NCBI RefSeq assembly: GCF_021869535.1
Contig: NW_026262637.1
Location: 2,604,001 to 2,668,000, forward strand
Reading direction: 5' to 3'
Length of the DNA stretch: 64,000 nucleotides
Source of the DNA: Mytilus californianus
Lineage: Eukaryota
Part shown: in pieces, positions 6,747-35,070 of the stretch
Position numbering within the stretch: the first letter of the stretch is position 1
Layout: each line of letters begins with the position of its first letter
The notes under the pieces: model-generated
Told to the model about the DNA's origin: nothing
The model's database searches: none
Seen by the model: only the letters and a program-made list of their open reading frames with translations
Program-made: the position numbers and the translations under genes

Positions 6747-9700
6747 GTTTTTTTTTTTGTTTTTTTTTAACATTAACAAATTCTTTATTGCACTAGTATC
6801 TAGTTGTTAACAACTGCCCTATATAGTACAACCATTATATATAGGTTTATCCCTGTGTGTTAATCGTCAAATGAACCCGGGGATTGACTTGACGAGATTA
6901 TATATTCTTCATTGTTAGAATAATTTACATTTGCATTTTACATTCATTTTGCGGATATCTGTTTTCTCCGTTTACGGTTTGTTATTTACAGTGATTTATT
7001 TATAAACCCTACAACACGTGTGATTTTCCGTTGGATAAATTTTGTCTATCATATTCTATCAAGGTAAGTTTCAAATATAATTGCCACTATGATTAAGATG
7101 ACTTAATGTATGATGTTCTTCTATGTGTATATATTTCTATTTGAAATGTCTTCAATCTTTGATATGATCTGATATTATTCTACGTTCACTGAAACGAAAG
7201 TAGATATTTCAACATGTTTGATTTCTTCAAAATTGAAAATAAGAAGATATATTGCTAATTTAGAAAACCGCTTTGTGTCCTTTGCTAATTTCATTTGGAT
7301 AATATTACAGAAAAATATCTTTCAGAAAAAAATGAGTGAATTTTAAAATGCTTTCTCTTTTTTTATTTAAGTTACCAATTTTTAATAGACGATTCCATTT
7401 TAAGAATCCTAGTGGTGTCTCTTTACCCTACACTTTAATAAATTTATAAATATTTTTTGTTTCCATATTATTTAATAAAAGTTCCGGTCGACTATTTATT
7501 TTGATGTTCAGCTTGGTTAAAACTTTAGTCTTAACTGAATTCTCATGCTGAATCATTGTTTTCCATTTTATTGGAATAGCATTTTTAAGTTTTAGCATTT
7601 CGGCAATCCAATTAGTTTTGTTTTTTAATTTCTCAAGTACTACCTTTTCTGATATTTTTCCATTAGTATCTAATATGTCATTTATATGAATTATTTTACT
7701 ATCAATCCAATTTTTAAAAACAAGGCATTTACCCTTATCTTTTATTTAGTTATTCCCCCATATAATCTGTTGTCGGATTGATCTAAAGTTTTCAGGTGTT
7801 GCAGTTTTCCCCTCTGTATATTTTATCCATGTTTTTATTATTTCTAAGTAGAAGTCTGGTATTTTGTACTTACCTATGTTAGATATTGAATTCATATTTT
7901 CTATGTTCATATTAAAAATAAGAATTTTTTTTCCAAAGTTATTAAAGAAGAATCTTGGTATAACTTTCCAGTTAGAGGTTTCAGAAGATTTTAATCTTTT
8001 GACCCATCCTATTTGAATTGCTTCAATTTGTTTTACAATGTCTGTCATATTTAGACCACCTTGTAACATTGGGGTACATAATACAGTTCTTTTCACTTTT
8101 TCATTTCGATTGTTCCAAATGAAATCAAAAATAATTTTATTAAATTGTGTTAAATGATCCTTATCTATATTGGATACTGTTGCTAAATATGTCAAGTTTG
8201 GGATGATGAGAGTTTTAACAACCGTTATTCGACCTATCATCGTTAGATTTCTTTTCTTCCAAGTATTTAATATTTTTTCTCATTTTTGGAACTGTTTATC
8301 AAAATTTAACTTTTGACACTCTTTTTTGTTCAAACCAAAATATATTCCTAAAGACTTAATTGGTCCATATGTCCAATTAATGTTTTCAAATTTGTCTATG
8401 CTGTGTTTTTGCTTACCTAACCATATTCCTTCAGTTTTTGTTCTATTCAGTTTTACCCCTTAGAATGTTGCAAATTTTTCTATTACATTTAGTATTTTAG
8501 ATATTTCATTTCTATTTTTTAGAAATAAGGTTGTGTCGTCTGCTATTTGTGATATTTTGAGACTATGTGATTTTCCATCAATTTTTATTTCAAACCCTTT
8601 TATATTAGAATCTTGTCTGATTTTACAGGCCAATATTTCTACAGCTATTACAAAAATTAGAGCGCTGCAAGGACATCCTTGTCGGATTCCTCTAAAAATA
8701 GATACGGGTTCTGATATCCAACCATTATTTGTAACAGAGCATTTAACATCATTGTAGATAGTTTTAATCCATTTCAAAATTGATTTTTGAAAGCCAAATT
8801 TTTGTAATGCCGAGTGCATAAATTCCCATTCAAGTGTATCAAACGCTTTGGAGAAGTCTAAAAATAACAAGGCTCCTTCTATTTTGAATGATTCAGCATA
8901 GTCTATGATATCCTGAATTTGTCTTACATTATACCCAATATAGCGATTTGCAATATAACCATTTTGGTCGGCACTAATGATTTTTGGTAGAATATTCTTA
9001 ATTCTTTGTGCAAGGGTATATGCAATCAGTTTTGTGTCAACATTTAGCAGTGTTATAGGTCTGTAGTTTTCTAAGAGTAAAGGATCATTTTTTTTTTTTG
9101 TGAATAAGGGAGATAATCCCCAGTTTTTGTGTTTCAGTTAGTTCCCCTTTTTCATAACATTTATTAAATGTATATACTGCAAATTCTTTGAGCTCACCCC
9201 AAAAGGTTTGATAAAATTCAACACTGAGACCATCTGACCCTGGAGAACGGTTTAATTCATTTTATATAAGGCTTTTGTGCATTCTTCCATGCTTATTTCT
9301 CCCTCTAAAGTATAACTTCCTTTTTCTGATAGCTTGTGGTCTATTTCAATTTCTGCAATGTATTCTTCTACATTTGGTTTTTATTTGGACTAGAGCTTTT
9401 GTAAATATCTTGATAGTATTTTCGTTTTATTTGTAAACTTGAATCTGTATCAGTATATATTACGCCATTTTTGTCTTTCAATGCTGTAATAGTCTTTTTT
9501 GATTGTCTTGATTTTTCTAAACCTAAGAAGAATTTAGTGTTTTTCTTCCCGTCCTCTATCCATTTTATTTTAGATCTTACTTGGGCACCCTTTGTTTTAT
9601 TAATATATAGTATTTCTATATTCTTTTCTACATTGTCAATTTCATTTTTTAATATACTCATATAGTTGTTATCTTTAGTCTCATTATTAATAAGATTATT

Positions 9701-10276
9701 AAGTTTGCCTAATTTTGTTTCTAAATTTATTATTATATCTTTATTTTTCTTTGCTTTTCTTTTACAGAAACCTATGGTATGTTCTCGTGTCTCAGTTTTA
9801 AATAAGTTCCATAGTACTGATGGATCCTTGGTATGTATTTTACTTTTATATTTATTGATTAATTTGTTTATCATCATTTTATAATTATTATCTTGAAGAA
9901 TGCTATTGTTTAGCTTAAAGAACCCTTTACCTTTATTTTGTGGACGTTCTTTAATTTTTAGTGATATTGCTTGGTGATCAGTATGTGTTATCATTGCTGG
10001 TCTAATATCAGCTGAGAATACCAGTGTTCTTAGTTCTGTACTGATCAGAAAGTAGTCTATGCGAGTGGCTTCTTTGTCACTGTTTTTTCTTTTCCATGTA
10101 AACTGTTTAGTTGCAACGTTTAATTCTCTCCAAATGTCAATGAGTTTTAAAGTTTTTATCATCATTTTAAATTGTTTACTGGTTTTCTATTTTTTTTGTC
10201 CAGGTTTAAAGTTTTTATTGTCTTTATTTGATAAAATGTCATTCATATCTCCTCCTATTATTAGCATTCCTAAACT
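6747..10276 (-). mobile_element. 5'-truncated L1/Tx1-clade LINE with frameshifted ORF2 (EN C-terminal half, RT, C-terminus)
   Basis: EN motifs IIGGDMND, IDIWRE and RIDYFLIS; RT motifs NYRPITLLNVD, LDFSKAFD, RGIRQGCP and QIADDTT. AATAAA at 6784-6789 precedes an A-rich tail at ~6747-6768. TSD ATTATTTTGGTTGGCCCGATT at 6726-6746 and 10277-10297. Confidence 0.93.
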
Positions 10277-10489
10277 ATTATTTTGGTTGGCCCGATTTAA
10301 CGACACTCAAACTTTGCTTTGCCACATTTCATGTAGTACTTGTTGCTAAATTACTAAATCACATGACGGAAGCTTATATATTAGGTATAACATATTGTTA
10401 AAGTTAAATCAAGATGGCACATTCTTTGTAAGGGAAATACTATCATGTCAGTAGATATACTAACATGATTACAATTTTTGTTTACTTAC

Positions 10490-10561
10490 AAATATTTCAA
10501 TGCCACATTGTTCCTGAAAACATCATCAGGTACGATGGTTAATTTGTTGTTCGCTAAATCC
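10490..10561 (-). CDS. LRR gene exon 9 (72 nt, A-type): DLANNKLTIVPDDVFRNNVALKY
   Basis: ttcattttAG acceptor, GTAAGT donor, phase 2/2, fits the xLxxNxLxxLPxxxFxxxxxLxxL consensus. Confidence 0.88.
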
Positions 10562-11282
10562 CTAAAATGAATAAAACAAATCCGTTTATTTTCTTCAATT
10601 AAATGACTGAGGTTTCGAAAATTTACTGAAACACAGCAGTACTTTTAAAAGCGTAATTTTATATATATAAATACATGAAACGTACCAAAAATTAAGGAAG
10701 AACTACTAATATTTAAACCAACGCAAATCTATTTATTTTACAGCCAATAACGCATTTTTTCTGATAGCAACTTATGAAATATTACATATTAAATATGATA
10801 GTTGTTGATACTTAAAGATACATTTATAAGGATACATACAGATATAGAAGTCTTTACAAAGGACCAACCAGCAAACTTAATATGAACCGGATCGAATAGT
10901 GTAGACAACACTGTACATATATATAAAATGTATATATATATATATAATGAACTAATTTTTGAATGATTATCATCCAAAGGAAACAGAAAATTAAAAAATA
11001 TATATATATTATGTCTATGTTTTGAATGTCGATACTTTTTGCTATGATGTACCATTTGTATTAAAGCTCTAAACTACTTTGTGCTCTTTCATTTATTACA
11101 GATTTCACTTGCAGTATACATGAAACTGTGATTACCATCTGACTGTTATAATTAATTTGTCTTCATAGAACTTTTATGTTCCGTACAAAACAAACAGCAA
11201 TTATTTGGATAAAGGTTTCCATAGCCTAAGAAATTTGTTATTAGGTATATACTATCATGTTAGCAAACAATAATTAACTTAC

Positions 11283-11351
11283 AAAATTAAAAGCACATTG
11301 TTCCTGAAAACAGCACCAGGCACGCTTGTTAATTTGTTGTTCGATAAATTC
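11283..11351 (-). CDS. LRR gene exon 8 (69 nt, B-type): NLSNNKLTSVPGAVFRNNVLLI
   Basis: ttatttaatgcAG acceptor, GTAAGT donor, in frame but one codon shorter than its siblings. Confidence 0.8.
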
Positions 11352-11941
11352 CTGCATTAAATAAAATAAACCTAGATTTGTTTTCTAAATAAATAAATAA
11401 ATTTCATAAATTGTGATTTAGTTGTCGGAGTCACAATCCTGTCTTATAGTCTCGATTGTCACATATTTTAATATTAGTAAGACTTATCCTTGTCTCCTAC
11501 AATGGTCAACACGATCGGTCTAACATATAGACCACGCACTGCTAACATTACCAAAGCAACTGAGATTACCCTCTCCAGTGTGGGTTAAATGTTGGTCAAT
11601 TATATTTAGTGTATGTATCTTTTTTAATACAGTTGTCTGTCATATATACTATAGATGAATCGAAGTCAGTATTTTTACTTTCATGTTCAAAATTTATTTT
11701 TAATGATTGGTTTTGAATTAAAAGTAATGAAAATATGCACAGTCAATCATCCAATTCAATGTACACGGATTATGTTAGAGGTGATAAATGTTCGATTATT
11801 ATATTTAATTTGTCTCCATTGAGCTTATATATTAGGTATAACATATTGCTGAGGTTAAGATATCAGGATGACACATGTTTGTAGGGAAATAATAGTATGT
11901 CAGTAAATATACTAACATGATTACAGTTATTATTTACTTAC

Positions 11942-12013
11942 AAATCTTCCAAGGCCACATTGTTCCTGAAAACACCATCAGGTACGATGGTTAGTTTGTT
12001 GTTCGATAAACTC
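11942..12013 (-). CDS. LRR gene exon 7 (72 nt, B/A hybrid): SLSNNKLTIVPDGVFRNNVALED
   Basis: tttatttaatgtAG acceptor, GTAAGT donor, phase 2/2. Confidence 0.88.
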
Positions 12014-12339
12014 CTACATTAAATAAAACAAACCCAGATTTGTTTTCTAAATAAATAAATTAGAATTTGAAAACTTACAAAAAATAGAGGAAGTACTGAT
12101 AGGAGAGTAATTCCTATTCATCAAAAGAAGTAAAATTGAAGTATTCTTTTCGAAAATGTTAAGTATGTCATCATGATATTTTTTAACATATTTATGTCAC
12201 AAATAAATATACATATGTGATCAAATTGTCGGACATATGTGATCAAATTGTCGGAGTCACAGTCCTGTCCTATAGTCTCGATTTTTTCACATATTCTAAC
12301 ATAAGTAAAACGTATTGTTGTCTGTTACCATGGGAAAGC

Positions 12340-12774
12340 CATTAAACAAAGAGTTCCAAATGGTGAAGTCGAAATCATCCCTTCGTAAATTTTACGGACG
12401 CCATCACGAGTTTGTTGACCGTTAAAAATATCCGTTTCACAGATGATATCGGATATGTTCCTTATGTCGTCACTACAATTCCATTCCCTTTTCATGAATG
12501 TGACCTACCGAATTGGAATATATACCGGGTTTTTAATAACACATGCAACACGACGGGTGCCACATGTGGGGCAGTGTCTGCTTATCCTTCCGGATCACCT
12601 GATATCACCCCCGTTTTTGGCGGGGGTCCTGTAGCTTAGTCTTTAGTTTTCTATGTTGTGACTTGTGGATTATTATTTGTCTGTTTGATTTTTTTCCTTT
12701 TTGTAGCCTTGGCGTATTCAGTTTATTTTCTATCTATGAATTTTTATGTCCCTCAGGTATCTTTTGCCCTTCTT
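12340..12774 (+). mobile_element. 3' end of Penelope-like retroelement (RT C-terminus KFYGRHHE plus 3' tail)
   Basis: gagttccaaatggtgaag...cgtaaattttacggacgccatcacgag and a tail matching 37920-38390, 33345-33600(-) and 16195-16305. Confidence 0.75.
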
Positions 12775-12795
12775 TAGATTGTTGTTCGATAACTC
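12775..12795 (-). pseudogene. Broken LRR exon remnant (A-type acceptor plus first ~21 nt)
   Basis: ttattcaattgaAG|GAGTTATCGAACAACAATCTA carries a 1-nt deletion versus siblings. The rest is replaced by the Penelope-like insertion. Confidence 0.7.
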
Positions 12796-13405
12796 CTTCA
12801 ATTGAATAAAACAAATCAGTTTATTTTCCTAAATTGAATGACTTAGACATGCTAGATTTCATAAACTTACTGAAAATAGAGGACTTAATCATAACAGATC
12901 TGCTAGTTGTTAATAGTTATAGATAACTATATATGGAAAACAATAGATATAGATGTCTTTGAAAAGAAACCAAACAGCAAAATTATTAAGTACCGGATCG
13001 TCTAGTAAAGACGATATTATACATATATAATATATATATATATATTCTGAAGACATTTTTGATCGATTATTATTAAAGAAAACAATGAATTAGATATATA
13101 TATAATTTGTTAATACTCATTATTATGATCTACCAATTGTATTAAAGTTCAAAATTACTGTGTGTACTTTTTATGATACAGATTTCGATTGCAGTATACG
13201 TTGAACTGTGACTACCGACCAATTGATATATTTAGCTTATTTTCATATAACTTTTATGTTCGGTACAAAACAAACAGCGATAACAGGGTTGAAGTTTCCA
13301 ATGCCAAAGTTAAATCAAAATATTAGGATAGAAAATGTTTGAATAGGTATATACAATCATGTTAGCAAACATACTCACAATATTATAGTTTTTTTTTTAA
13401 CTTAC

Positions 13406-13477
13406 ACAGCAGATAAAAGCAGATTGTTCCTGAAAACACCATCAGTCACGCTTGTTATTTTGTTGTTCGATAAACCC
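13406..13477 (-). CDS. LRR gene exon 6 (72 nt, B-type): GLSNNKITSVTDGVFRNNLLLSA
   Basis: ttttttctaatgtAG acceptor, GTAAGT donor, phase 2/2. Confidence 0.87.
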
Positions 13478-16010
13478 CTACATTAGAAAAAACCATCAAG
13501 ATTTGTATTCAATTTAAATAAATTAGACTTCAAAAACTTAAAGAACATAGGGGAAGTACTTAAAATAGAGTCATTTATATCTATCTATTTACATGTTATA
13601 TGTCGAAATTTTCAAACAAAAGTAAATAAAACAACGAACAAAATTATGCAATCAATTATCAATTTTAAAGCAACTATTGCATTAATACTGACATTGATTT
13701 ATTACCAGATTCATTTGAAGTAAAACAATGTATTTTAAAGTTGTGCAACGATGTTTTTTGTTATATAATATGATTAGAATACACAAAACACAATAATGAT
13801 AGACAACCTTCTCATTTGTTTGTTGTCTCAAAACAGATGGTTAATGTCCACTTATGATGTACCTGTTATTTGATTAAGTGGTATAGACTTTAGTTTTATG
13901 TCTTTTTTATTCTTTTTATGTATAACTTTGAATTTGTTTGATGCTAAAATCATGACATTTTTCTAAGGTTGTTTGTTCACTTTTCGATAAGATTCAGACA
14001 TTAAGGATGTTTGGTAGCTGTGTTCATTCACTTATATCACATTCTTCTTAAATCCTAATTATCCTTTACAATGAACGTTCATATTTAACTTAAATAAGTT
14101 GAAAGTTATCTGACAACAGTGAGTTATAGGAATACAAAAAAGAAGGTTACGTTATCCTTTAACTTCCAGTTTTGCTATACAGATAATGTCCTCTCATTTA
14201 TAATTTACAAATAATTTATAAATAGCGTGTAAAACTATCTATCTTAACGAACTTTAAATAAAGGATTCATTTGAAATTTATTTTGACTAATATTTATTGA
14301 TAATGGTTGTTGTATTAATATCATATGATTTTAAATGAGAGTTACTGCTTTTGAGAAACAATGAGTTAAAAGAAGTAAAGTTAAAGAATTCTTTTTGAAA
14401 ATTGTCATCATTAGTTTATTAATTTTATGAAACATCTATGTTACAGATGACTACCGAAAAGCTTCAGTTGTCGGGCCACAATCTTCTCATATAGTCTTGA
14501 TAGTCACTTAGTCATTGATTCTCACCATGGTCAACACGATCGGTTTATAATATGGACCACGCACTGCCCTGACTGCGGAGCGATGTGATGTCCAGTGTAA
14601 GTTTAATGTCGGTCAGTTATATCAATTGTATGTATTATTTTATAGACTATTGTCCATCATATGGTTACATTTTTTTTATTTCTGTAGTGATGTTTGATGG
14701 TTTCTGGGCGTTCCTATTGTATCTTTTGCCTTCGTGTAATAACAAACTAGGCTGCTTGTCATTTGATAGTTTTGATAAACAATACTTACAGTATCAGCAA
14801 TTTGACATTATAGAAAAACAAATCAAGTGGCAAGGTCGTTAAAGAATTCCCATCTAAGTATCTTTAAAAAAATGTAATTGTTATAAGTATTGGGGGGAAA
14901 TATATAATATAAATACCAGAATCAAAAAATAAAAGTAGACTTTTTTATAAACCCGAAAAGATTGAGTACATTGTAATTACGATAATAATAGTCAAAAGAC
15001 CAAAATAAATACAATCGATAGTCGCTCTTCAGCGCTTGTTTTGTTATTGTATCTAAATTTCACATTGTAGACACTACATCTTCATTATAACGGATTTAAA
15101 AGGATTCAGAAACACAGGTAATCCTTTTTCGGCAATTTTCAGCATTTATTTAAAAATCAAATTAACAAAACGACGAAAATATTGTTTGGAATCACTTATG
15201 GTTTGATTTTGAACTTAAATGTAGGCTTTTAAATATGCACATGTGTTTAAAACATGTAGCGATATAAAACAAAATATGAAAACACATGCTGGAATTCCCG
15301 TGTCGATTATCATATATCCTGTTGCCATAATTTAAATTCTAGTTTCAATATTTGAAGAATTATTTTGTCTCTACAAAATATAGCCGGCTATTTTATCTCT
15401 TTTTTTATATAACAGAAAAAAAATTGCTCAGTTTTCAATTGACATTGCGTAAACTGTTTTAAGTCATTGTGTATTGGCAATCCCCATTTCAATTCATCTC
15501 AATTCGTCTCAAAGGAGCAAATTCTGACTCTTGTTTTAGTTCCTTTAAAATTGTATGATGTAGATCAGTTTTTACTGTATTGGTGTCTTAAATCACAGAT
15601 GACTGTCTATATGCGTCAGTTACCGGGGCCAAAAACCTAACAAAAAGTCTCGTTTACCACATAGTCGAATACCAAGGGACTTTCAATGTCACTTATATTG
15701 GGAAGCACGTCGTGTAATAACAAACTGGTCAGAATTTTTCCATTCATTTTCAAACTTTCTTTGTATCGATTGGTTTGATTAAAAATAAATGAAAAATATG
15801 CAAAGTTAATCATGCAATTCAATGTAAACGGTCAGTGTAAGAGGTGATTTATTTCGAGCATTACATTTAATTTGTATTCATAGAGCTCATATGTTCGATA
15901 TATCATAATTTTGAAGGTGAATCAAAATATTAGGATTGCAACTTCTTTGTAAGAGAAATACTATCATGTCAGTTAACATACTAACATAATTACAACTATT
16001 GTTTACATAC

Positions 16011-16082
16011 ATATATTTCAATGCCACATTGTTCCGGAAAACATCATCTGGTACGATGGCTAGATTGTTCTTCTGTAGAACC
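16011..16082 (-). CDS. LRR gene exon 5 (72 nt, A-type): VLQKNNLAIVPDDVFRNNVALKY
   Basis: ttttattcaatgtAG acceptor, GTATGT donor, phase 2/2. Confidence 0.87.
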
Positions 16083-16633
16083 CTACATTGAATAAAACAA
16101 ATCAGTTATTTTCTTCAATTCCATAACTTTTATTTCGAAAACTAACAGAAAATAGAGGAAGTACTTACAGTTATAATGAACTTAATCTTTAGTTGTGTGT
16201 ACTATTATTTGTCCCTTTGTTGTTTTCATTTTTAGCCATGGCGTTGTCAGTTAATTTTCGATTTATGAGTTTGATTGTTTCTCTTGTATCTTTCGCCCCT
16301 CTTTTATAGAAGAGTAATAATTGCATATACAAGTATATATAATGTGTCGATAGTTAAGAAAGAACTACTTTAAAAAAAAACAAAAAAAACCAGCAAATTT
16401 ACTATGTACGAGATCATCTAGTAACGCCGATACTACACATATATACATATATATTATGAGAAATTGTTTGGACGTATAACATACAAAATAAACAGAGAAT
16501 TAGAAGAGATATGATTGAAATGTTTAGATTTTGATACTCATTGTTTTTTTTCTTTGTGATTACCGTCCAATTGATATATTCAGTTTGTCTTTATTGAGTT
16601 AACATATATATGTTCGGTACAAACAAACAGCAA

Positions 16634-16910
16634 TTAGGGAGCTACCATTTGATTTTTATGGGGGGGGGGGGGGGGGGGGGGGGGCTAGGATGAAATTTGA
16701 AAAAAATAGGCAGGACAGGAGTATTGAGTAAAAAAAAGGCAGGATGAGACACTTGCAAAAAAAAAAGTCAGGATGACAATTAAGGTAAAAAAAAGTCAGG
16801 ATAAACTTTAAAAAAAAAGGCAGGACCGAATAGAGTGAAAAATAAAAAGGCAGGACAGAGATTACAATTAAAAAAAATGCAGGACAAAATTTTTCATCCT
16901 TAGAATAATT
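16634..16910. mobile_element. Truncated MITE-like repeat (GGGAGCTACCATTTGA head, poly-G run, AAAAAGGCAGGA repeats)
   Basis: G homopolymer at ~16660-16685 and about six aaaaggcagga/aaaagtcagga units. The second terminus was not seen. Confidence 0.45.
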
Positions 16911-17489
16911 AAAATTTAAAATTATTTTGAATTTTAGTCTAGAAATCTTCATACCCAAAACTAATTTTTATCATTCCTTATATCATCTAAACTTTTAATT
17001 TCTGGTGTCTCAGAACTCCCAACCTCGCTACCATGGTAAAATATGACATTCAGAAATGGCGTGTGAACCTTCAACTTCAATAGCCAGGCACAACTCAAGG
17101 AAAGATACAAATGAATGAAAAAAATGGCATTTTGATGACAAAGATGTTATTTTCCCTGTAGAATCTGTTCTTTTTTAAATATGCCCTTTTCTAATAAAAA
17201 ACATAACAGAAGTGACATACAATCTAACCATACCTACACCACAAGTCAACTTTCTTGTCAATTTTAAAAATTTCGTATTCTTTTAAAAAACACGAAACAA
17301 CAATCTTCCAAGAAAAGAAATAACCACGGTGCAAACGAATGCCATGATGTTTTCTGTTGTGGTTCGTTTTGATGATGTGTAGTGTCTTATCTTTTAAAGT
17401 CCAAATAATTGTGAAATAGCCTTCAATACCGTCATTGTAATGATAACTCATCGGACTGGTAATTAGAAAATAATTGTATGAAATATCAG

Positions 17490-17720
17490 AACGACATATT
17501 CGTTACATTTGTTTCCTGTACCAAGTCAGGAATATAGCAGTTTGTATACAGTTCGTTTCTATGAATGTTAATGTTTAGTATTTTTTTTTTGCTTTGATGT
17601 GTTCCTGTTGTTCTTTGTTTAGTTGATGTGTTTTCCTCGGTTTTAGTTTGTAACCCAGATTTGTTTTCTTTCAATCGATTTTTTACTTTTGAAAAGCGAT
17701 TAACTACTGTTGCCTTTTGT
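17490..17720. repeat. Interspersed repeat family M2 (my label; CAAGTCAGGAATATGGCAGTT ... CTACTGTTGCCTTT)
   Basis: Also at ~26280-26490, with partial copies at ~19520-19600 and ~38000-38030 (inverted). Confidence 0.75.
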
Positions 17721-17829
17721 TTGCAATCCTAAAGTTAAATAAAAAATATTAGGATAAGTAATTATCCATTAGGAAAACTCTTTCATGTCAGCAAACACAT
17801 TCACAAAAGTACAGTTCGTTTTTACTTAC

Positions 17830-17901
17830 AAAGAAGTTAAAACCACATTTTCCCTGAATACACCATTAGGTACGCTTGTTAGTTTGTTGTTCGATATATC
17901 C
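17830..17901 (-). CDS. LRR gene exon 4 (72 nt, B-type): DISNNKLTSVPNGVFRENVVLTS
   Basis: ctttattacttgtAG acceptor, GTAAGT donor, phase 2/2. Confidence 0.88.
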
Positions 17902-18028
17902 CTACAAGTAATAAAGTTATACAGGTGGTTTTCTTTCAAATAGATAAATTAGACTCCGAAAACTTACAGAAAGTACTTATACATGTTATAGGAAAGTAAT
18001 TCTTTTGCATGTACAGTAGAACTTTGAA

Positions 18029-19160
18029 GCGCAATGGTGCTCTTAAGTTCAATGGTCACGCTAGAGTGCGATGGTCTACGCTAAAGTAGGATGTTGTATC
18101 GTTCTAAAATGCGATGGTTTACTTGTTTGCTAAAGTACGGTGGAACATCACGCTAAAGTACGATGGACTTATATGGTAAGGTCGGAGGGCTTGAAACGTT
18201 AGACTACATAAATGCTAAAATAATGTCTTTTCTGCAAAAACTAGTATGCTAAGGTATAACACATGTGATACTCTTTATAATTCACCGGTAGGCATATGTA
18301 CAAGTACCCGGCCACGTCCACTTGTATTTGTAGTATTTGTGTTTTTATCCATCTGGTGAGTTAAGCCTTTTTCAACTGATTTTTATAGTTCGTTATAATG
18401 TTGTACTGTTACACCACTGTCCCAGGTTAGGGGGAGGGTTGGGATCCCGCTAACATGTTTAACTCCGCCACATTCTGTATGTTTGTGCCTGTCCCAAGTC
18501 ATGAGCCTGTAATTCAGTGGTTGTCGTTTGTTTATGTGTTTAATTGCTTAAAATGTAATTTATATGTCACAAAATACTATTGTTCCTGTAAATGTTTTTG
18601 TATAACAATTTAATTAAACATTTGGATAATTTTTGTAGCTTGCCGTTTACACAGTTTATCCAACATCCAGACACCTCCCTTTATAGTCGTCATTGTAAAT
18701 TACAAATACAAAAATCGTTCATTGTCGAAATATAAGTAACAATTTGTTGTACAAGCTTAAATGCAAATGCGAGAGAAAGGCAAAACCCGCCGGGCTTACT
18801 CTTTTTTAGTAGCGAGTACAAATACATGTTATATTTTCCAATAGTGTACAAACTATGTTTTAGCAGGATACAGGAAATGCGTATACCTTTTATATCTAAC
18901 AAGTATTTGTTTAGCACCACTTAACACCATTTACCTCAACTGACAAAGAAAGGTTAAGTTTGAAACTTAGTTATGGATATCTTGATTTAAAAAATTGTTA
19001 ATCAATACTTATTGATTTATTGTTCGGCATGCTAGTTTTTGGTATGTAAAAACGATTGTGAGCGTCATAATTTAACTACGATTCTTTAGTCTATACTTTC
19101 GCGGACAATCGGACTTTAGCGTGATCATCATGCTTTAGAATCTACAACGCACTAATCATT
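18029..19160. mobile_element. Candidate TIR element with inverted subterminal CACGCTAAAGT repeats, interrupted by an M1 copy
   Basis: cacgctaaagt/cgctaaagt repeats at ~18050-18170, inverted copy actttagcgtga at 19113-19124. Confidence 0.45.
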
Positions 19161-20420
19161 CCTACATATACAAGTACATATACTGTGTCGATATGAAATG
19201 AAGAACGACTTAAATTAACGAACAAAATTATGCAGTATGCAAAACATTTTACAGCATATAGTGCATTAAATCTGAAAGCAATTTATTACCAGACGCGCAT
19301 TGGGTTGTCGTTTCTTTTTTTGGGAAATTTTCGATGTCATTCTGCGGTAAACCATGTACTATTACACATTAAAAATATGTATTTCTCTGTTCTGAGTGTT
19401 CATGCGTTTTTTTTAACTGTAAAAATTGTACGTAGTTTTAACCTTTTAGCAGTATTTTTAACATTACCATACAAGTGAGAGGTTTACCTAATCATAATAG
19501 TAGGTTCAACGTACCAATATTTATTTAAATGTCTTGTATCAAGTCAGGAATTAGTAGTTGCTGTCAAATAGTTCGTTTCAATATTTGTCGGTGTTTTGAT
19601 TTGTTGCTGTTCAATGGTTCTGTATTTGCGTTGTTATAAATAATACTTACAGGTCTTGCAAATCAACGTTAGAGGAGAACAGATTAATTGGTAAGGTTGT
19701 CAAAGAGTTCCTAGAGATGGATCTTTTAAAAATGTTAATATTACTAATATCGGGAAAAATATATATGATATTAATACAAAAATCTAAACATGAAAGTACA
19801 GGCTCTTATGAAACCGAACAGAGAGAGTAGTTATGCATAGTTATAGTCAAAAGAAAAAAACACAACCGGTTGTCAAGCGTTACTACTAGTTTTAATATCT
19901 TATTTTTGTTGGACACCATATACACTGCATCTCCATTACAATGGATTAAAAAGGATTCAGTAACAGCGCCAAGTAATCTTTGTTACACAACTTTGAACAA
20001 TCGTTTTAACATCAAAGTTACCATTGTTAAACATGCTATAGCTTTATAGAAATAAACTAAAAAAGAAAGCTGGAATTCCCATGTCGATTTCTATAATTTG
20101 AACGTGTTGTATATTTCGAAAGAAAAACCGAGAGATATTTGAAATCGTGTTGTCTGATCGTTGGTCGAGTTATTGTCTCTTTGACATATTCCCAATTTCC
20201 ATTCGCAATTTTACCTGTATGTGTTTTTGTCATAACTCAAATATGGTTTTCGAGTTTCAAATTCTATCAGATATCAATATTTGTAGAATTCTTTTGCCTT
20301 TACAAAACGTTATAGCCAGCTGTTTTCGTCTCTTTTTTTTTAATATATCAGAAAATATTCGCTGAGTTTTCAATTTACATTGCGTGAAATGTTTCATAAT
20401 GTGCATGTCATTGTGAATTG

Positions 20421-20965
20421 ACAATTCCCTTATCAATTCAACACAATTCCCTGATCAATTCAACACAATTCCCTTATAAATTCAACACAATTCCCTTATC
20501 AATTCAACACAATTCCCTTATCAGTTCAACACATTCCCTTATCAATTCAACACAATTCCCTGATCAATTCAACACAATTCCCTGATCAATTCAACACAAT
20601 TCCCTTATCAATTCAACACAATTCCCTTATCAATTCAACACAATTCCCTGATCAATTCAACACAATTCCCTGATCAATTCAACACAATTCCCTGATCAAT
20701 TCAACACAATTCCCTGATCAATTCAACACAATTCCCTTATCAATTCAACACAATTCAACACAATTCCCTTATCAATTCAACACAATTCCCTTATCAATTC
20801 AACACAATTCCCTTATCAATTCAACACAATTCCCTTATCAATTCAACACAATTCCCTTATCAATTCAACACAATTCCCTCATCAATTCAACACAATTCCC
20901 TTATCAATTCAACACAATTCCCTTATCAATTCAACACAATTCCCTTATCAATTCAACACAATTCC
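20421..20965. repeat. 22-bp minisatellite (CAATTCCCTTATCAATTCAACA)n, about 24-25 copies
   Basis: Head-to-tail units with CTTAT/CTGAT variants and no spacers. Confidence 0.97.
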
Positions 20966-21412
20966 TATAGAATTATTACTGCTTTCGTGTTATCTCTTAG
21001 AATGTTTAACAAATATCATAACATAAGGTCTATATTACAACATAATCGAATAGCGTGAGACTAATCATTGTCACATACTAAATAAAAAAAACTCGATGGG
21101 ATTGATTGCCCCTTCTGTGTCTCCTGCGTTAATGTTATACCAAAATGGTTAGTAATTATATACATGATTAACTTTTATTTTCATTGATTGGTTTTGATTT
21201 AAAATTACTGAAAAATAAGCACAGTTAATCAGTTCAATGTAAACGGTTCATGAAAGAGATAATTATTCAATTATTAAATGTAATTGTCTCCATATGTTCG
21301 GCATAATATATTCTGGAAGTTGAATCAAAATATCTGGGTAACAACTTCATGTTCGGGAAATAATATCATTTCAGTAAACATACTAACATGATTACAATTA
21401 TTGTTTACTTAC

Positions 21413-21484
21413 AATTTTTCTAATGCCACGTTGTTCCTGAAGACGTCTTCCGGTACGATGGTTAGACTGTTGTTCAACAAATCA
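21413..21484 (-). CDS. LRR gene exon 3 (72 nt, A-type): DLLNNSLTIVPEDVFRNNVALEK
   Basis: gatttattcaatgtAG acceptor, GTAAGT donor, phase 2/2. Confidence 0.88.
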
Positions 21485-30361: not shown

Positions 30362-30433
30362 ATGAAATTCACATTTAAGTAATCCGCAAAAGTACCATTG
30401 TGTAAGGTTCTAATGGCGTTGTCAGACAAATCT
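30362..30433 (-). CDS. LRR gene exon 2 (72 nt, unique): DLSDNAIRTLHNGTFADYLNVNF
   Basis: gtttttttttaatatAG acceptor, GTAAGT donor. Junction codons TT+A=Leu with exon 1 and AT+T=Ile with exon 3. Confidence 0.87.
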
Positions 30434-34443: not shown

Positions 34444-34882
34444 ATACCACAAGGTTGTTAGCAAAGTGATTAAGCATTAAACCCTCATTTTTGTCTTTAC
34501 CAGTTTACATTAATTGTATACTTTTAGGCATTGGCGTTGTAAAATCATTTCATGATAAGAATATTTTATCTAGTTTTTTTTCCTATTATCATTGAACCAT
34601 TCAGGTCGGCCTTTTGTCGTTTCCTGTATGTAAAGTGTGCAATTTTCCATAAATTTAGTCAGGAATACATTTTACTTATTTTGTTCGAAGTACTTAGACT
34701 TTTACTGAAGTTCAATGTTTGCGATTTGAATGTTCTTTATCAGCAGTCCGTTCTATTAGTCTCAACAAGTCATTTTAAAAGTTTAGTAATTGCAGTTAAA
34801 TGAGGATATTGTACTATGAAATCTTGTATACAATATATGATATATAACATGTGTTTTTTTTTTACATATACTAACTACATAC

Positions 34883-35070
34883 AACTCTAATGTTGACTCA
34901 GGGAAGCTTGGTATTTCTATTATCCCTCTTCTGTCGCAGACATACCGAGGTCCTTTGGTCTCACACACCATTTCACAAATTGATATTATCTTACAATCTT
35001 CGTTGGCATTGCAACTCACTTCAATCAATAATAATAGTGTTATTTCCTTGCATCTAAGCAAAACGGACAT
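34883..35070 (-). CDS. LRR gene first coding exon: signal peptide plus Cys-rich LRR N-cap (MSVLLRCKEITLLLLIEVSCNANEDCKIISICEMVCETKGPRYVCDRRGIIEIPSFPESTLE)
   Basis: ATG at 35070 with an in-frame TAA upstream. Acceptor ccctttgcAG at 35091-35090 implies a further 5' UTR exon. The C..C..C...CxxxxIxxIP cap is present. 188 nt ending in phase 2 at GTATGT. Confidence 0.88.

What the first reader, a model, noticed from the sequence alone, without database searches (positions are those of the whole stretch)
10490..21484. Variation concentrated at exon junctions (predicted concave beta-strand) while VFRNNxxL is homogenised
Seen: the middle of exons 3-9 is nearly constant (T-I/S-V-P-x-x-V-F-R-N-N-V), but the residues forming LxxLxLxxN differ in every repeat (EK-L-DIS, TS-L-VLQ, KY-M-GLS, SA-V-SLS, ED-L-NLS, KY). 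Established: this strand forms the ligand-binding concave face of LRR solenoids. Inference: because the strand spans the splice junction, skipping or reordering any symmetric exon creates a new surface without a frameshift. That would give combinatorial diversity, loosely analogous to VLR module shuffling.
Basis: partly seen in the sequence, partly recalled or inferred. Interest (0 to 1): 0.7.

Follow-up and report, generated by a model that had tools for sequence, protein, structure and literature searches.

The report
Mussel one-repeat-per-exon LRR receptor gene
This stretch is the middle of a mussel gene for a cell-surface leucine-rich-repeat protein, one repeat per small exon, whose likely ligand-contacting residues vary fast; the layout is known elsewhere, and the one RNA run I could lay on five of its exons (about 6% of it read) put no read on them, so making diversity by exon skipping stays untested.

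Summary
The seven exons are real. All lie on the minus strand, are 72 nt long (one is 69 nt), and have phase-2 introns that split the fourth-position Leu codon of LxxLxLxxN.

Variation does sit beside the junctions. Mean pairwise amino-acid difference is 0.85 there against 0.27 elsewhere (exact permutation p = 0.0003). Across 52 paralogous exons, the three junction x positions change faster than synonymous and intron sites.

Three parts of the finding do not hold:
- **Missed exons.** If it counted the start-codon cap exon (35070-34882) as exon 1 and LRR1 (30433-30362) as exon 2, it had already seen LRR1.
- **Not homogenised.** The core has high synonymous divergence (pS 0.44, dN/dS 0.17), which indicates purifying selection.
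- **No splicing evidence.** The one RNA run showed no reads on five of the exons, and splicing cannot reorder exons.

The gene spans about 44 kb and encodes signal peptide, Cys cap, 11 LRR exons, LRRCT, stalk and a transmembrane segment. Its relatives appear only in Mytilus and are uncharacterised.

The same layout, with the same splicing idea, is published for brown-algal ROCO genes. Phase-2 LRR exon arrays are also known in Tetrahymena and in gonadotropin receptor genes. Another window of this genome gave a similar finding (s1-342861).

Verdict: new member of a known kind.

The parts
34882..35070 (-). First coding exon: start codon, weak signal peptide and five-Cys LRRNT-like cap. It ends TT|GTATGT, in phase 2.
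   Evidence: It is 61-69% identical to the N-termini of nine Mytilus proteins. Paralogous copies lie in L017 and L004. Pfam LRRNT matches only weakly, at E = 0.22 on P0003.
30362..30433 (-). LRR1 exon, 72 nt, phase 2, of the type that follows the cap.
   Evidence: The same type is the first LRR in a paralogue (C57:2.93 Mb) and in P0007. LRR_8 gives E = 0.049.
21413..21484 (-). LRR exon, A type (..TIVPEDVFRNNVAL..), 72 nt.
19651..19722 (-). LRR exon, C type (..RNSLTTLPINLFSSNV..), 72 nt, phase 2.
   Evidence: Intact copies with the same splice sites occur in six paralogous clusters, and P0003 contains this type.
17830..17901 (-). LRR exon, B type (..TSVPNGVFRENVVL..), 72 nt.
16011..16082 (-). 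LRR exon, A type, 72 nt, GTATGT donor.
14790..14861 (-). LRR exon, C type, 72 nt, phase 2.
   Evidence: It is colinear with 19651-19722 in the duplicated A-C-B unit.
13406..13477 (-). LRR exon, B type, 72 nt.
12774..12796 (-). Truncated remnant of the 5' end of an LRR exon, with its upstream intron block, next to a high-copy element.
   Evidence: nhmmer model positions 3-23; repeat family D4 at 84% identity.
11942..12013 (-). LRR exon, 72 nt. Its 5' part and upstream intron resemble its B-type neighbour; its 3' part is A type.
   Evidence: D3 is 90% identical to 11294-11398, and D2 is 82% identical to 10431-10631.
11283..11351 (-). LRR exon, B type, 69 nt (one codon shorter), still in phase.
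10490..10561 (-). LRR exon, A type, 72 nt; the last one inside the window. The gene continues left of the window in L001 (last LRR, LRRCT, stalk, TM).

Best explanation
The stretch is the repeat-encoding core of a minus-strand gene of about 44 kb. The gene belongs to a mussel (Mytilus) family of uncharacterised single-pass membrane proteins with an extracellular leucine-rich-repeat domain.

Each 24-residue repeat is one 72-nt exon flanked by phase-2 introns. The array grew in the germline by tandem duplication of a three-exon unit (A-C-B) and by unequal crossover.

Purifying selection holds the hydrophobic scaffold and the convex side (..VFRNNxxL) constant. The exposed x residues of LxxLxLxxN, which happen to sit on either side of the intron, change faster than silent and intron sites, which fits diversifying selection on a binding face.

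Inference: the diversity is encoded in the germline, as many paralogues with different numbers and sorts of repeat exons. Nothing shows that splicing produces it.
For: Exons and phases.

Gene ends:
- Cap exon.
- Last LRR, LRRCT, stalk and TM exons in L001.
- Full-length relative P0007 (cap, LRRs, LRRCT, TM, tail).

Family:
- At least 74 exon matches in clusters on six contigs.
- Relatives found only in M. edulis, M. coruscus and M. galloprovincialis, all unnamed.
- LRR class: best solved matches are ALS, VLR-A, LRRTM, LGR4/5 and Toll.

Duplication unit: colinear B, C and A blocks between 16.1-21.7 kb and 10.3-16.1 kb.

Selection:
- In the window, junction x columns give dN/dS about 5.5 and the core 0.17, with core pS 0.44.
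- In 52 family exons, nonsynonymous changes per site are 18.7, 13.4 and 12.0 at columns 22, 23 and 1. The synonymous rate is 6.4 and aligned intron is about 8. Pooled binomial p = 0.003.

Exons look functional:
- 53 of 57 copies have an open frame with AG/GT.
- Donor positions +1 to +8 show 0.17 changes per site, against about 8 in the intron.
Against: - No transcript evidence. The sampled RNA run put no read on the five exons in 10400-16200, and the public protein collection holds no spliced multi-repeat product beyond fragmentary genome-annotation models.
- The selection test is a parsimony count on short, paralogous, possibly recombining exons, and the tree was built from the same data. It is suggestive, not a likelihood site test.
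- The donor of the LRRCT exon reads GC rather than GT, so this copy might splice poorly.
- The cytoplasmic end of the gene could not be fetched.
- No usable structure model was obtained, so 'concave face' rests on established LRR knowledge.
Confidence: 0.75

Rival explanations
1. One reading: regulated skipping of the symmetric LRR exons gives many receptor isoforms with different concave surfaces from one gene, a splicing-based repertoire.
For: - All 11 LRR exons are phase 2-2 and a multiple of 3 nt long.
- Any order-preserving subset keeps the frame and restores a hydrophobic junction residue.
- Brown-algal ROCO genes with the same 72-bp phase-2 layout are reported to give several LRR-exon splice variants (PMC11378527).
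Against: - There were zero RNA reads on five exons in the only raw RNA run, so neither constitutive nor skipped junctions were seen.
- The donors are uniformly strong (GTAAGT) and highly conserved, which is more usual for constitutive exons.
- Reordering is impossible by cis-splicing.
- No docking or selector-type elements were looked for or seen.
Confidence: 0.08
2. The array is a silent or decaying gene copy. Junction variability would then reflect relaxed constraint rather than selection for diversity.
For: - No RNA reads.
- GC donor at the LRRCT exon.
- Introns full of transposon pieces, a truncated exon remnant and a satellite.
- The nonsynonymous rate at the junction columns is only 1.5-2.3 times the intron rate.
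Against: - All 11 LRR exons and the cap exon have open frames and consensus splice sites in AT-rich DNA, where stop codons are frequent.
- Core dN/dS is 0.17.
- The rate at columns 22, 23 and 1 exceeds both neutral yardsticks rather than equalling them.
Confidence: 0.1
3. Gene conversion keeps the exon cores alike within the gene (concerted evolution) while the junction codons escape it, as the word 'homogenised' implies.
For: - One local event is visible. Exon 12013 shares 90% identity with its neighbour 11351 over the upstream intron and the 5' part of the exon.
- Some window exons are each other's best match by exon sequence.
Against: - Core synonymous divergence (pS 0.44) is at least as high as flank divergence (0.23-0.31).
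- A, B and C exon types are shared with other clusters, and window exons group with exons of other genes in the tree.
Confidence: 0.05

Closest known systems
Brown-algal LRR-ROCO (and LRR-only) genes with shuffled LRR exons (Zambounis et al. 2012; Teng et al. 2024, PMC11378527)
   Same: - One LRR per 72-bp exon, all in phase 2.
- Tandem exon duplication and shuffling.
- A few positively selected positions on the concave face.
- Combinatorial splicing of LRR exons proposed as a source of receptor diversity.
   Different: - Those are cytoplasmic GTPases with ROC-COR domains in a stramenopile. This is an animal type-I membrane protein with LRRNT-like and LRRCT caps.
- Splice variants are documented there and not here.
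[quoted passage not shown]
   Same: - Arrays of equal-length LRR exons with an extreme phase-2 bias and a 'junction' amino acid shared by neighbouring exons.
- Clonal expansion by unequal crossover.
   Different: - 90-bp exons in a ciliate.
- Tens of thousands of exons.
- A different LRR type and protein context.
Vertebrate glycoprotein-hormone receptor and LGR genes
   Same: LRR exons of similar size, with all introns in phase 2 (as cited in PMC11378527). LGR4/5 ectodomains are among the best solved-structure matches to the family.
   Different: Those end in a seven-helix receptor domain. Family members here have one TM helix and a short repeat-bearing tail, and no 7TM reading frame lies in the window.
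Lamprey and hagfish variable lymphocyte receptors
   Same: - The order SP, LRRNT, LRR1, a variable number of middle LRRs, last LRR, LRRCT, Thr/Ser-rich stalk.
- VLR-A and VLR-B are strong sequence matches.
- Variability sits on the concave strand.
   Different: VLR diversity comes from somatic assembly of an incomplete germline gene from flanking cassettes. Here the germline gene is complete and interrupted by ordinary introns, and nothing suggests somatic change.

Membership tests
Extracellular 'typical' LRR proteins with Cys caps (eLRR) | Tandem 24-residue LxxLxLxxNxL repeats | tested here: met
   - Alignment of the seven exons.
- Single exons hit Pfam LRR_8 at E = 0.008-0.05.
- Family proteins P0003 and P0007 pass the LRR_8 cut-off.
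- PDB matches reach E = 1e-35.
Extracellular 'typical' LRR proteins with Cys caps (eLRR) | N-terminal signal peptide and LRRNT cap | tested here: inconclusive
   The cap exon has a hydrophobic start and five Cys before the first strand. Pfam LRRNT gives only E = 0.22 on P0003. UniRef names P0003 'LRRNT domain-containing'. No signal-peptide predictor was available.
Extracellular 'typical' LRR proteins with Cys caps (eLRR) | LRRCT cap, then a membrane anchor | tested here: met
   L001:7816-7679 encodes a CxxCFDCDC..W..C..C module. Its counterpart in relative P0007 (the two are 69% identical) aligns with the VLR-B-type LRRCT of 4bv4. L001:1272-1146 encodes a hydrophobic stretch of about 20 residues followed by RR. 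Both lie just outside the window.
One-LRR-per-exon phase-2 arrays with exon shuffling (brown-algal type) | 72-bp exons, all in phase 2 | tested here: met
One-LRR-per-exon phase-2 arrays with exon shuffling (brown-algal type) | Excess nonsynonymous change at a few concave-face positions | tested here: met
   Columns 22, 23 and 1 exceed the synonymous and intron rates (pooled p = 0.003). This is a counting method, not a likelihood test.
One-LRR-per-exon phase-2 arrays with exon shuffling (brown-algal type) | Transcripts that combine different subsets of LRR exons | tested here: inconclusive
   No RNA read fell on five exons, with about 6% of one run read.
One-LRR-per-exon phase-2 arrays with exon shuffling (brown-algal type) | ROC-COR GTPase domains | tested here: not met
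   Family proteins carry LRRCT, a TM helix and a short tail. Pfam finds no ROC or COR domain.
Agnathan VLR | Incomplete germline gene completed somatically from flanking LRR cassettes | tested here: not met
   The germline locus holds the cap, 11 LRR exons and the LRRCT in order, each with AG/GT splice sites.
LGR / glycoprotein-hormone receptors | Seven-helix receptor domain after the LRRs | tested here: not met
   There is a single TM exon in L001 and in relatives, and no 7TM reading frame in the window.
Dscam-type alternative exon clusters | Mutually exclusive choice of one exon per cluster, seen in RNA | not testable with these tools

The most novel reading that the evidence does not exclude
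In mussel immune cells, the symmetric LRR exons of this Mytilus-specific receptor family are skipped in regulated combinations. A few dozen germline genes would then yield a much larger repertoire of binding surfaces, an animal counterpart of what is proposed for brown-algal ROCO genes.
Probability: 0.07. Interest if true: 0.75.

Novelty: new member of a known kind. Interest (0 to 1): 0.3.

Why it matters
Bivalves rely on large, fast-evolving germline receptor families.

This work defines an unannotated Mytilus-specific family of capped LRR membrane proteins. Current gene models for it are fragments, probably because 72-nt exons are scattered over tens of kilobases.

The family's likely binding-face residues evolve faster than neutral sites. 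That gives annotators an exon template and gives immunologists a candidate recognition family.

It does not give evidence for a new diversity mechanism. The exon-skipping idea is testable with one long-read cDNA experiment.

Tried and rejected
- **RNA reads.** RNA run X21 gave reads only on the transposon at 12146-12727. X20, labelled 'RNA?', behaves like DNA because it covers introns. So no junctions and no isoforms were seen.
- **Structure.** AlphaFold2 on P0007:1-190 without an alignment gave pLDDT 28.8, which is unusable.
- **Simple patterns for the caps.** Regexes for LRRNT and LRRCT found nothing in the window. The LRRCT lies outside it.
- **tblastx between regions downstream of paralogues.** It matched in all frames, meaning intron DNA homology, so it did not pick out exons.
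- **Word search with P0003.** It found only itself. This blank says nothing about longer or shorter relatives.
- **7TM (LGR/GRL101-like) hypothesis.** Rejected: there is a single TM helix.
- **Two-exon A/B unit (s1-302800).** Replaced by a three-exon A-C-B unit.
- **Joined product.** Exons were searched one by one by reference, and public proteins P0003 and P0007 stood in for the joined product.
Full report
**What is there**

The window has about 30% G+C and belongs to a 1.65-Gb assembly, at C57:2604001-2668000. On the minus strand, a motif scan and an nhmmer profile find exactly seven closely related exons. They lie at 21484-21413, 17901-17830, 16082-16011, 13477-13406, 12013-11942, 11351-11283 and 10561-10490.

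Each follows a ..tag acceptor and ends before GTAAGT (once GTATGT). Six are 72 nt and one is 69 nt. The reading frame starts at the second base, so every intron is phase 2 and splits one codon.

Each exon translates to one 24-residue typical LRR. The split codon is the fourth-position hydrophobic residue of LxxLxLxxN.

I queried the start-codon exon at 35070-34882 (signal-like start, five Cys, phase-2 donor) against 1.84 billion representative proteins. Nine hits came back at 61-69% identity. The three I looked up by name (P0003, P0007, P0009) are unnamed Mytilus edulis proteins.

Laying these proteins back on the DNA, together with a splice-aware scan, revealed three more intact 72-nt phase-2 LRR exons in the window:
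- LRR1 at 30433-30362.
- Two 'C-type' exons (..GNSLTTLPxNLFSSNV..) at 19722-19651 and 14861-14790.

C-type exons are intact, with the same splice sites, in six paralogous clusters. They are also part of the public model P0003.

The order in the window is therefore cap, LRR1, A, C, B, A, C, B, A/B-chimera, B, A. Colinear blocks show that a three-exon A-C-B unit was duplicated.

**Gene ends and family**

In the 10 kb to the left of the window (L001), the gene continues on the minus strand:
- a last LRR exon (8493-8424);
- an LRRCT exon (about 7820-7677);
- a Ser/Thr-rich stalk exon (2600-2445);
- a transmembrane exon (1272-1146).

The tail exons could not be fetched.

P0007 is a short, complete relative with cap, three LRRs, LRRCT, TM and tail. 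Pfam finds only LRR families in it.

All detectable relatives are unnamed proteins of M. edulis, M. coruscus and M. galloprovincialis, mostly fragments.

The genome holds at least 74 such exons, in clusters on six contigs.

By sequence, the nearest solved structures are capped extracellular LRR proteins: acid-labile subunit, VLR-A and VLR-B, LRRTM, LRRC15, LGR4/5 and Toll.

**Is variation concentrated at the junction?**

Yes. Among the seven exons, columns 22, 23, 1 and 3 (x2, x3, x5 and x7 of LxxLxLxxN) have a mean pairwise amino-acid difference of 0.85. The other 19 columns average 0.27 (exact permutation p = 0.0003).

For 52 intact family exons I built a tree from each exon plus 100-nt flanks and counted changes by parsimony:

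| Site class | Changes per site |
|---|---|
| Column 22, nonsynonymous | 18.7 |
| Column 23, nonsynonymous | 13.4 |
| Column 1, nonsynonymous | 12.0 |
| Pooled synonymous | 6.4 |
| Well-aligned intron columns | about 8 |
| Donor positions +1 to +8 | 0.17 |

Pooled over the three junction columns there are 108 nonsynonymous and 10 synonymous changes, against an expected nonsynonymous share of 0.82 (p = 0.003). Family-wide, column 3 is not elevated.

This is the classic pattern of variable exposed residues in LRR proteins. It is suggestive of diversifying selection but not proof: the exons are short and paralogous, they may recombine, and the method is a count.

**Is the core homogenised?**

No. 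In the VFRNNxxL core, pN is 0.10 and pS is 0.44, giving dN/dS of 0.17. Flank divergence between window exons is 0.23-0.31.

The A, B and C types are shared with other clusters, and window exons group with exons of other genes. Purifying selection explains the constancy.

One local recombination event is visible. Exon 12013 is 90% identical to its neighbour 11351 over the upstream intron and the 5' part of the exon, but is A-type in its 3' part. This agrees with note s1-302716.

**Are the exons functional?**

Of 57 family copies, 53 keep an open frame with AG/GT, in AT-rich DNA. Donor positions are almost invariant, at 0.17 changes per site against about 8 in the intron. That argues for real, spliced exons.

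This copy, however, has a GC donor at its LRRCT exon where a paralogue has GT.

**Splicing hypothesis**

It is formally true that any order-preserving subset of the 11 LRR exons stays in frame. Every possible junction codon gives Leu, Phe, Ile, Val or Met. Reordering is not possible by splicing.

The one raw RNA run, with about 6% of it read, put no read on the five exons in 10400-16200. It only hit a high-copy element at 12146-12727. So there is no evidence for expression, constitutive splicing or skipping.

The public protein collection also holds no spliced multi-repeat product of this family beyond genome-annotation fragments. That blank is weak evidence.

**What is known**

- Brown-algal ROCO genes have one LRR per 72-bp phase-2 exon, exon shuffling, four positively selected concave positions, and several splice variants that combine LRR exons.
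- Tetrahymena has arrays of 90-bp phase-2 LRR exons with a shared junction residue (PMC6564038).
- Gonadotropin receptor genes also have phase-2 LRR exons (cited).
- The follow-up on another window of this genome reached a similar conclusion for a similar gene (s1-342861).

**Verdict**

This is a new member of a known kind, in an uncharacterised, apparently Mytilus-restricted receptor family.

Noticed in passing
window 20324-21068: A tandem array of a 22-nt unit (about 34 copies) lies in the intron between exons 21484 and 19722. It causes the strong negative GC skew of that 2-kb bin.
   Followed up: no
window 12146-12727: A very high-copy element, with contig depth 1e5-1e6 in DNA runs. It is the only part of 10400-16200 with RNA reads. 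It abuts a truncated LRR exon remnant at 12774-12796 and may have destroyed that exon.
   Followed up: partly
window 7746-10165 (minus): Three open reading frames look like pieces of a LINE-type retrotransposon (endonuclease and reverse-transcriptase parts). They sit in the long intron between exon 10561 and the next LRR exon in L001.
   Followed up: no
L001:7677-7682 (C57, just left of the window): The donor of this gene's LRRCT exon reads CAG|GCTAGT, where paralogue L005 has CAG|GTTAGT. It is either a GC-AG intron or a weakened splice site.
   Followed up: no
P0011-P0015, P0018 (Mytilus relatives): The cytoplasmic tails carry 2-6 copies of a motif of about 35 residues containing NDGIDFI and YNNIPPKSH. 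That is a tyrosine in a YxN / YxxI context, which could be a signalling motif. Pfam finds nothing in the tail of P0007, the one full-length relative scanned; the other tails were not scanned.
   Followed up: no
P0009 (M. edulis model): The same cap exon type is joined to an F5/8-type-C / fucolectin-like domain. This is either exon shuffling of the cap onto a lectin gene or an annotation chimera.
   Followed up: no
window 11858 -> 10408: DNA contigs from another individual and from a related species show a 'goes back 1451' joint with short sides (33-37 nt). The spacing equals that of repeat D2. It could be an extra copy of the A+B exon pair or a mis-join between paralogous units.
   Followed up: no
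window 13410 and 13458: Contigs of the related species differ from the window in exon 13477-13406. One change is at junction codon 23 (Ala to Ser). The other turns the unusual Ile of codon 7 into the family's usual Leu. Only the best-supported rows were shown, so no rates could be drawn.
   Followed up: partly
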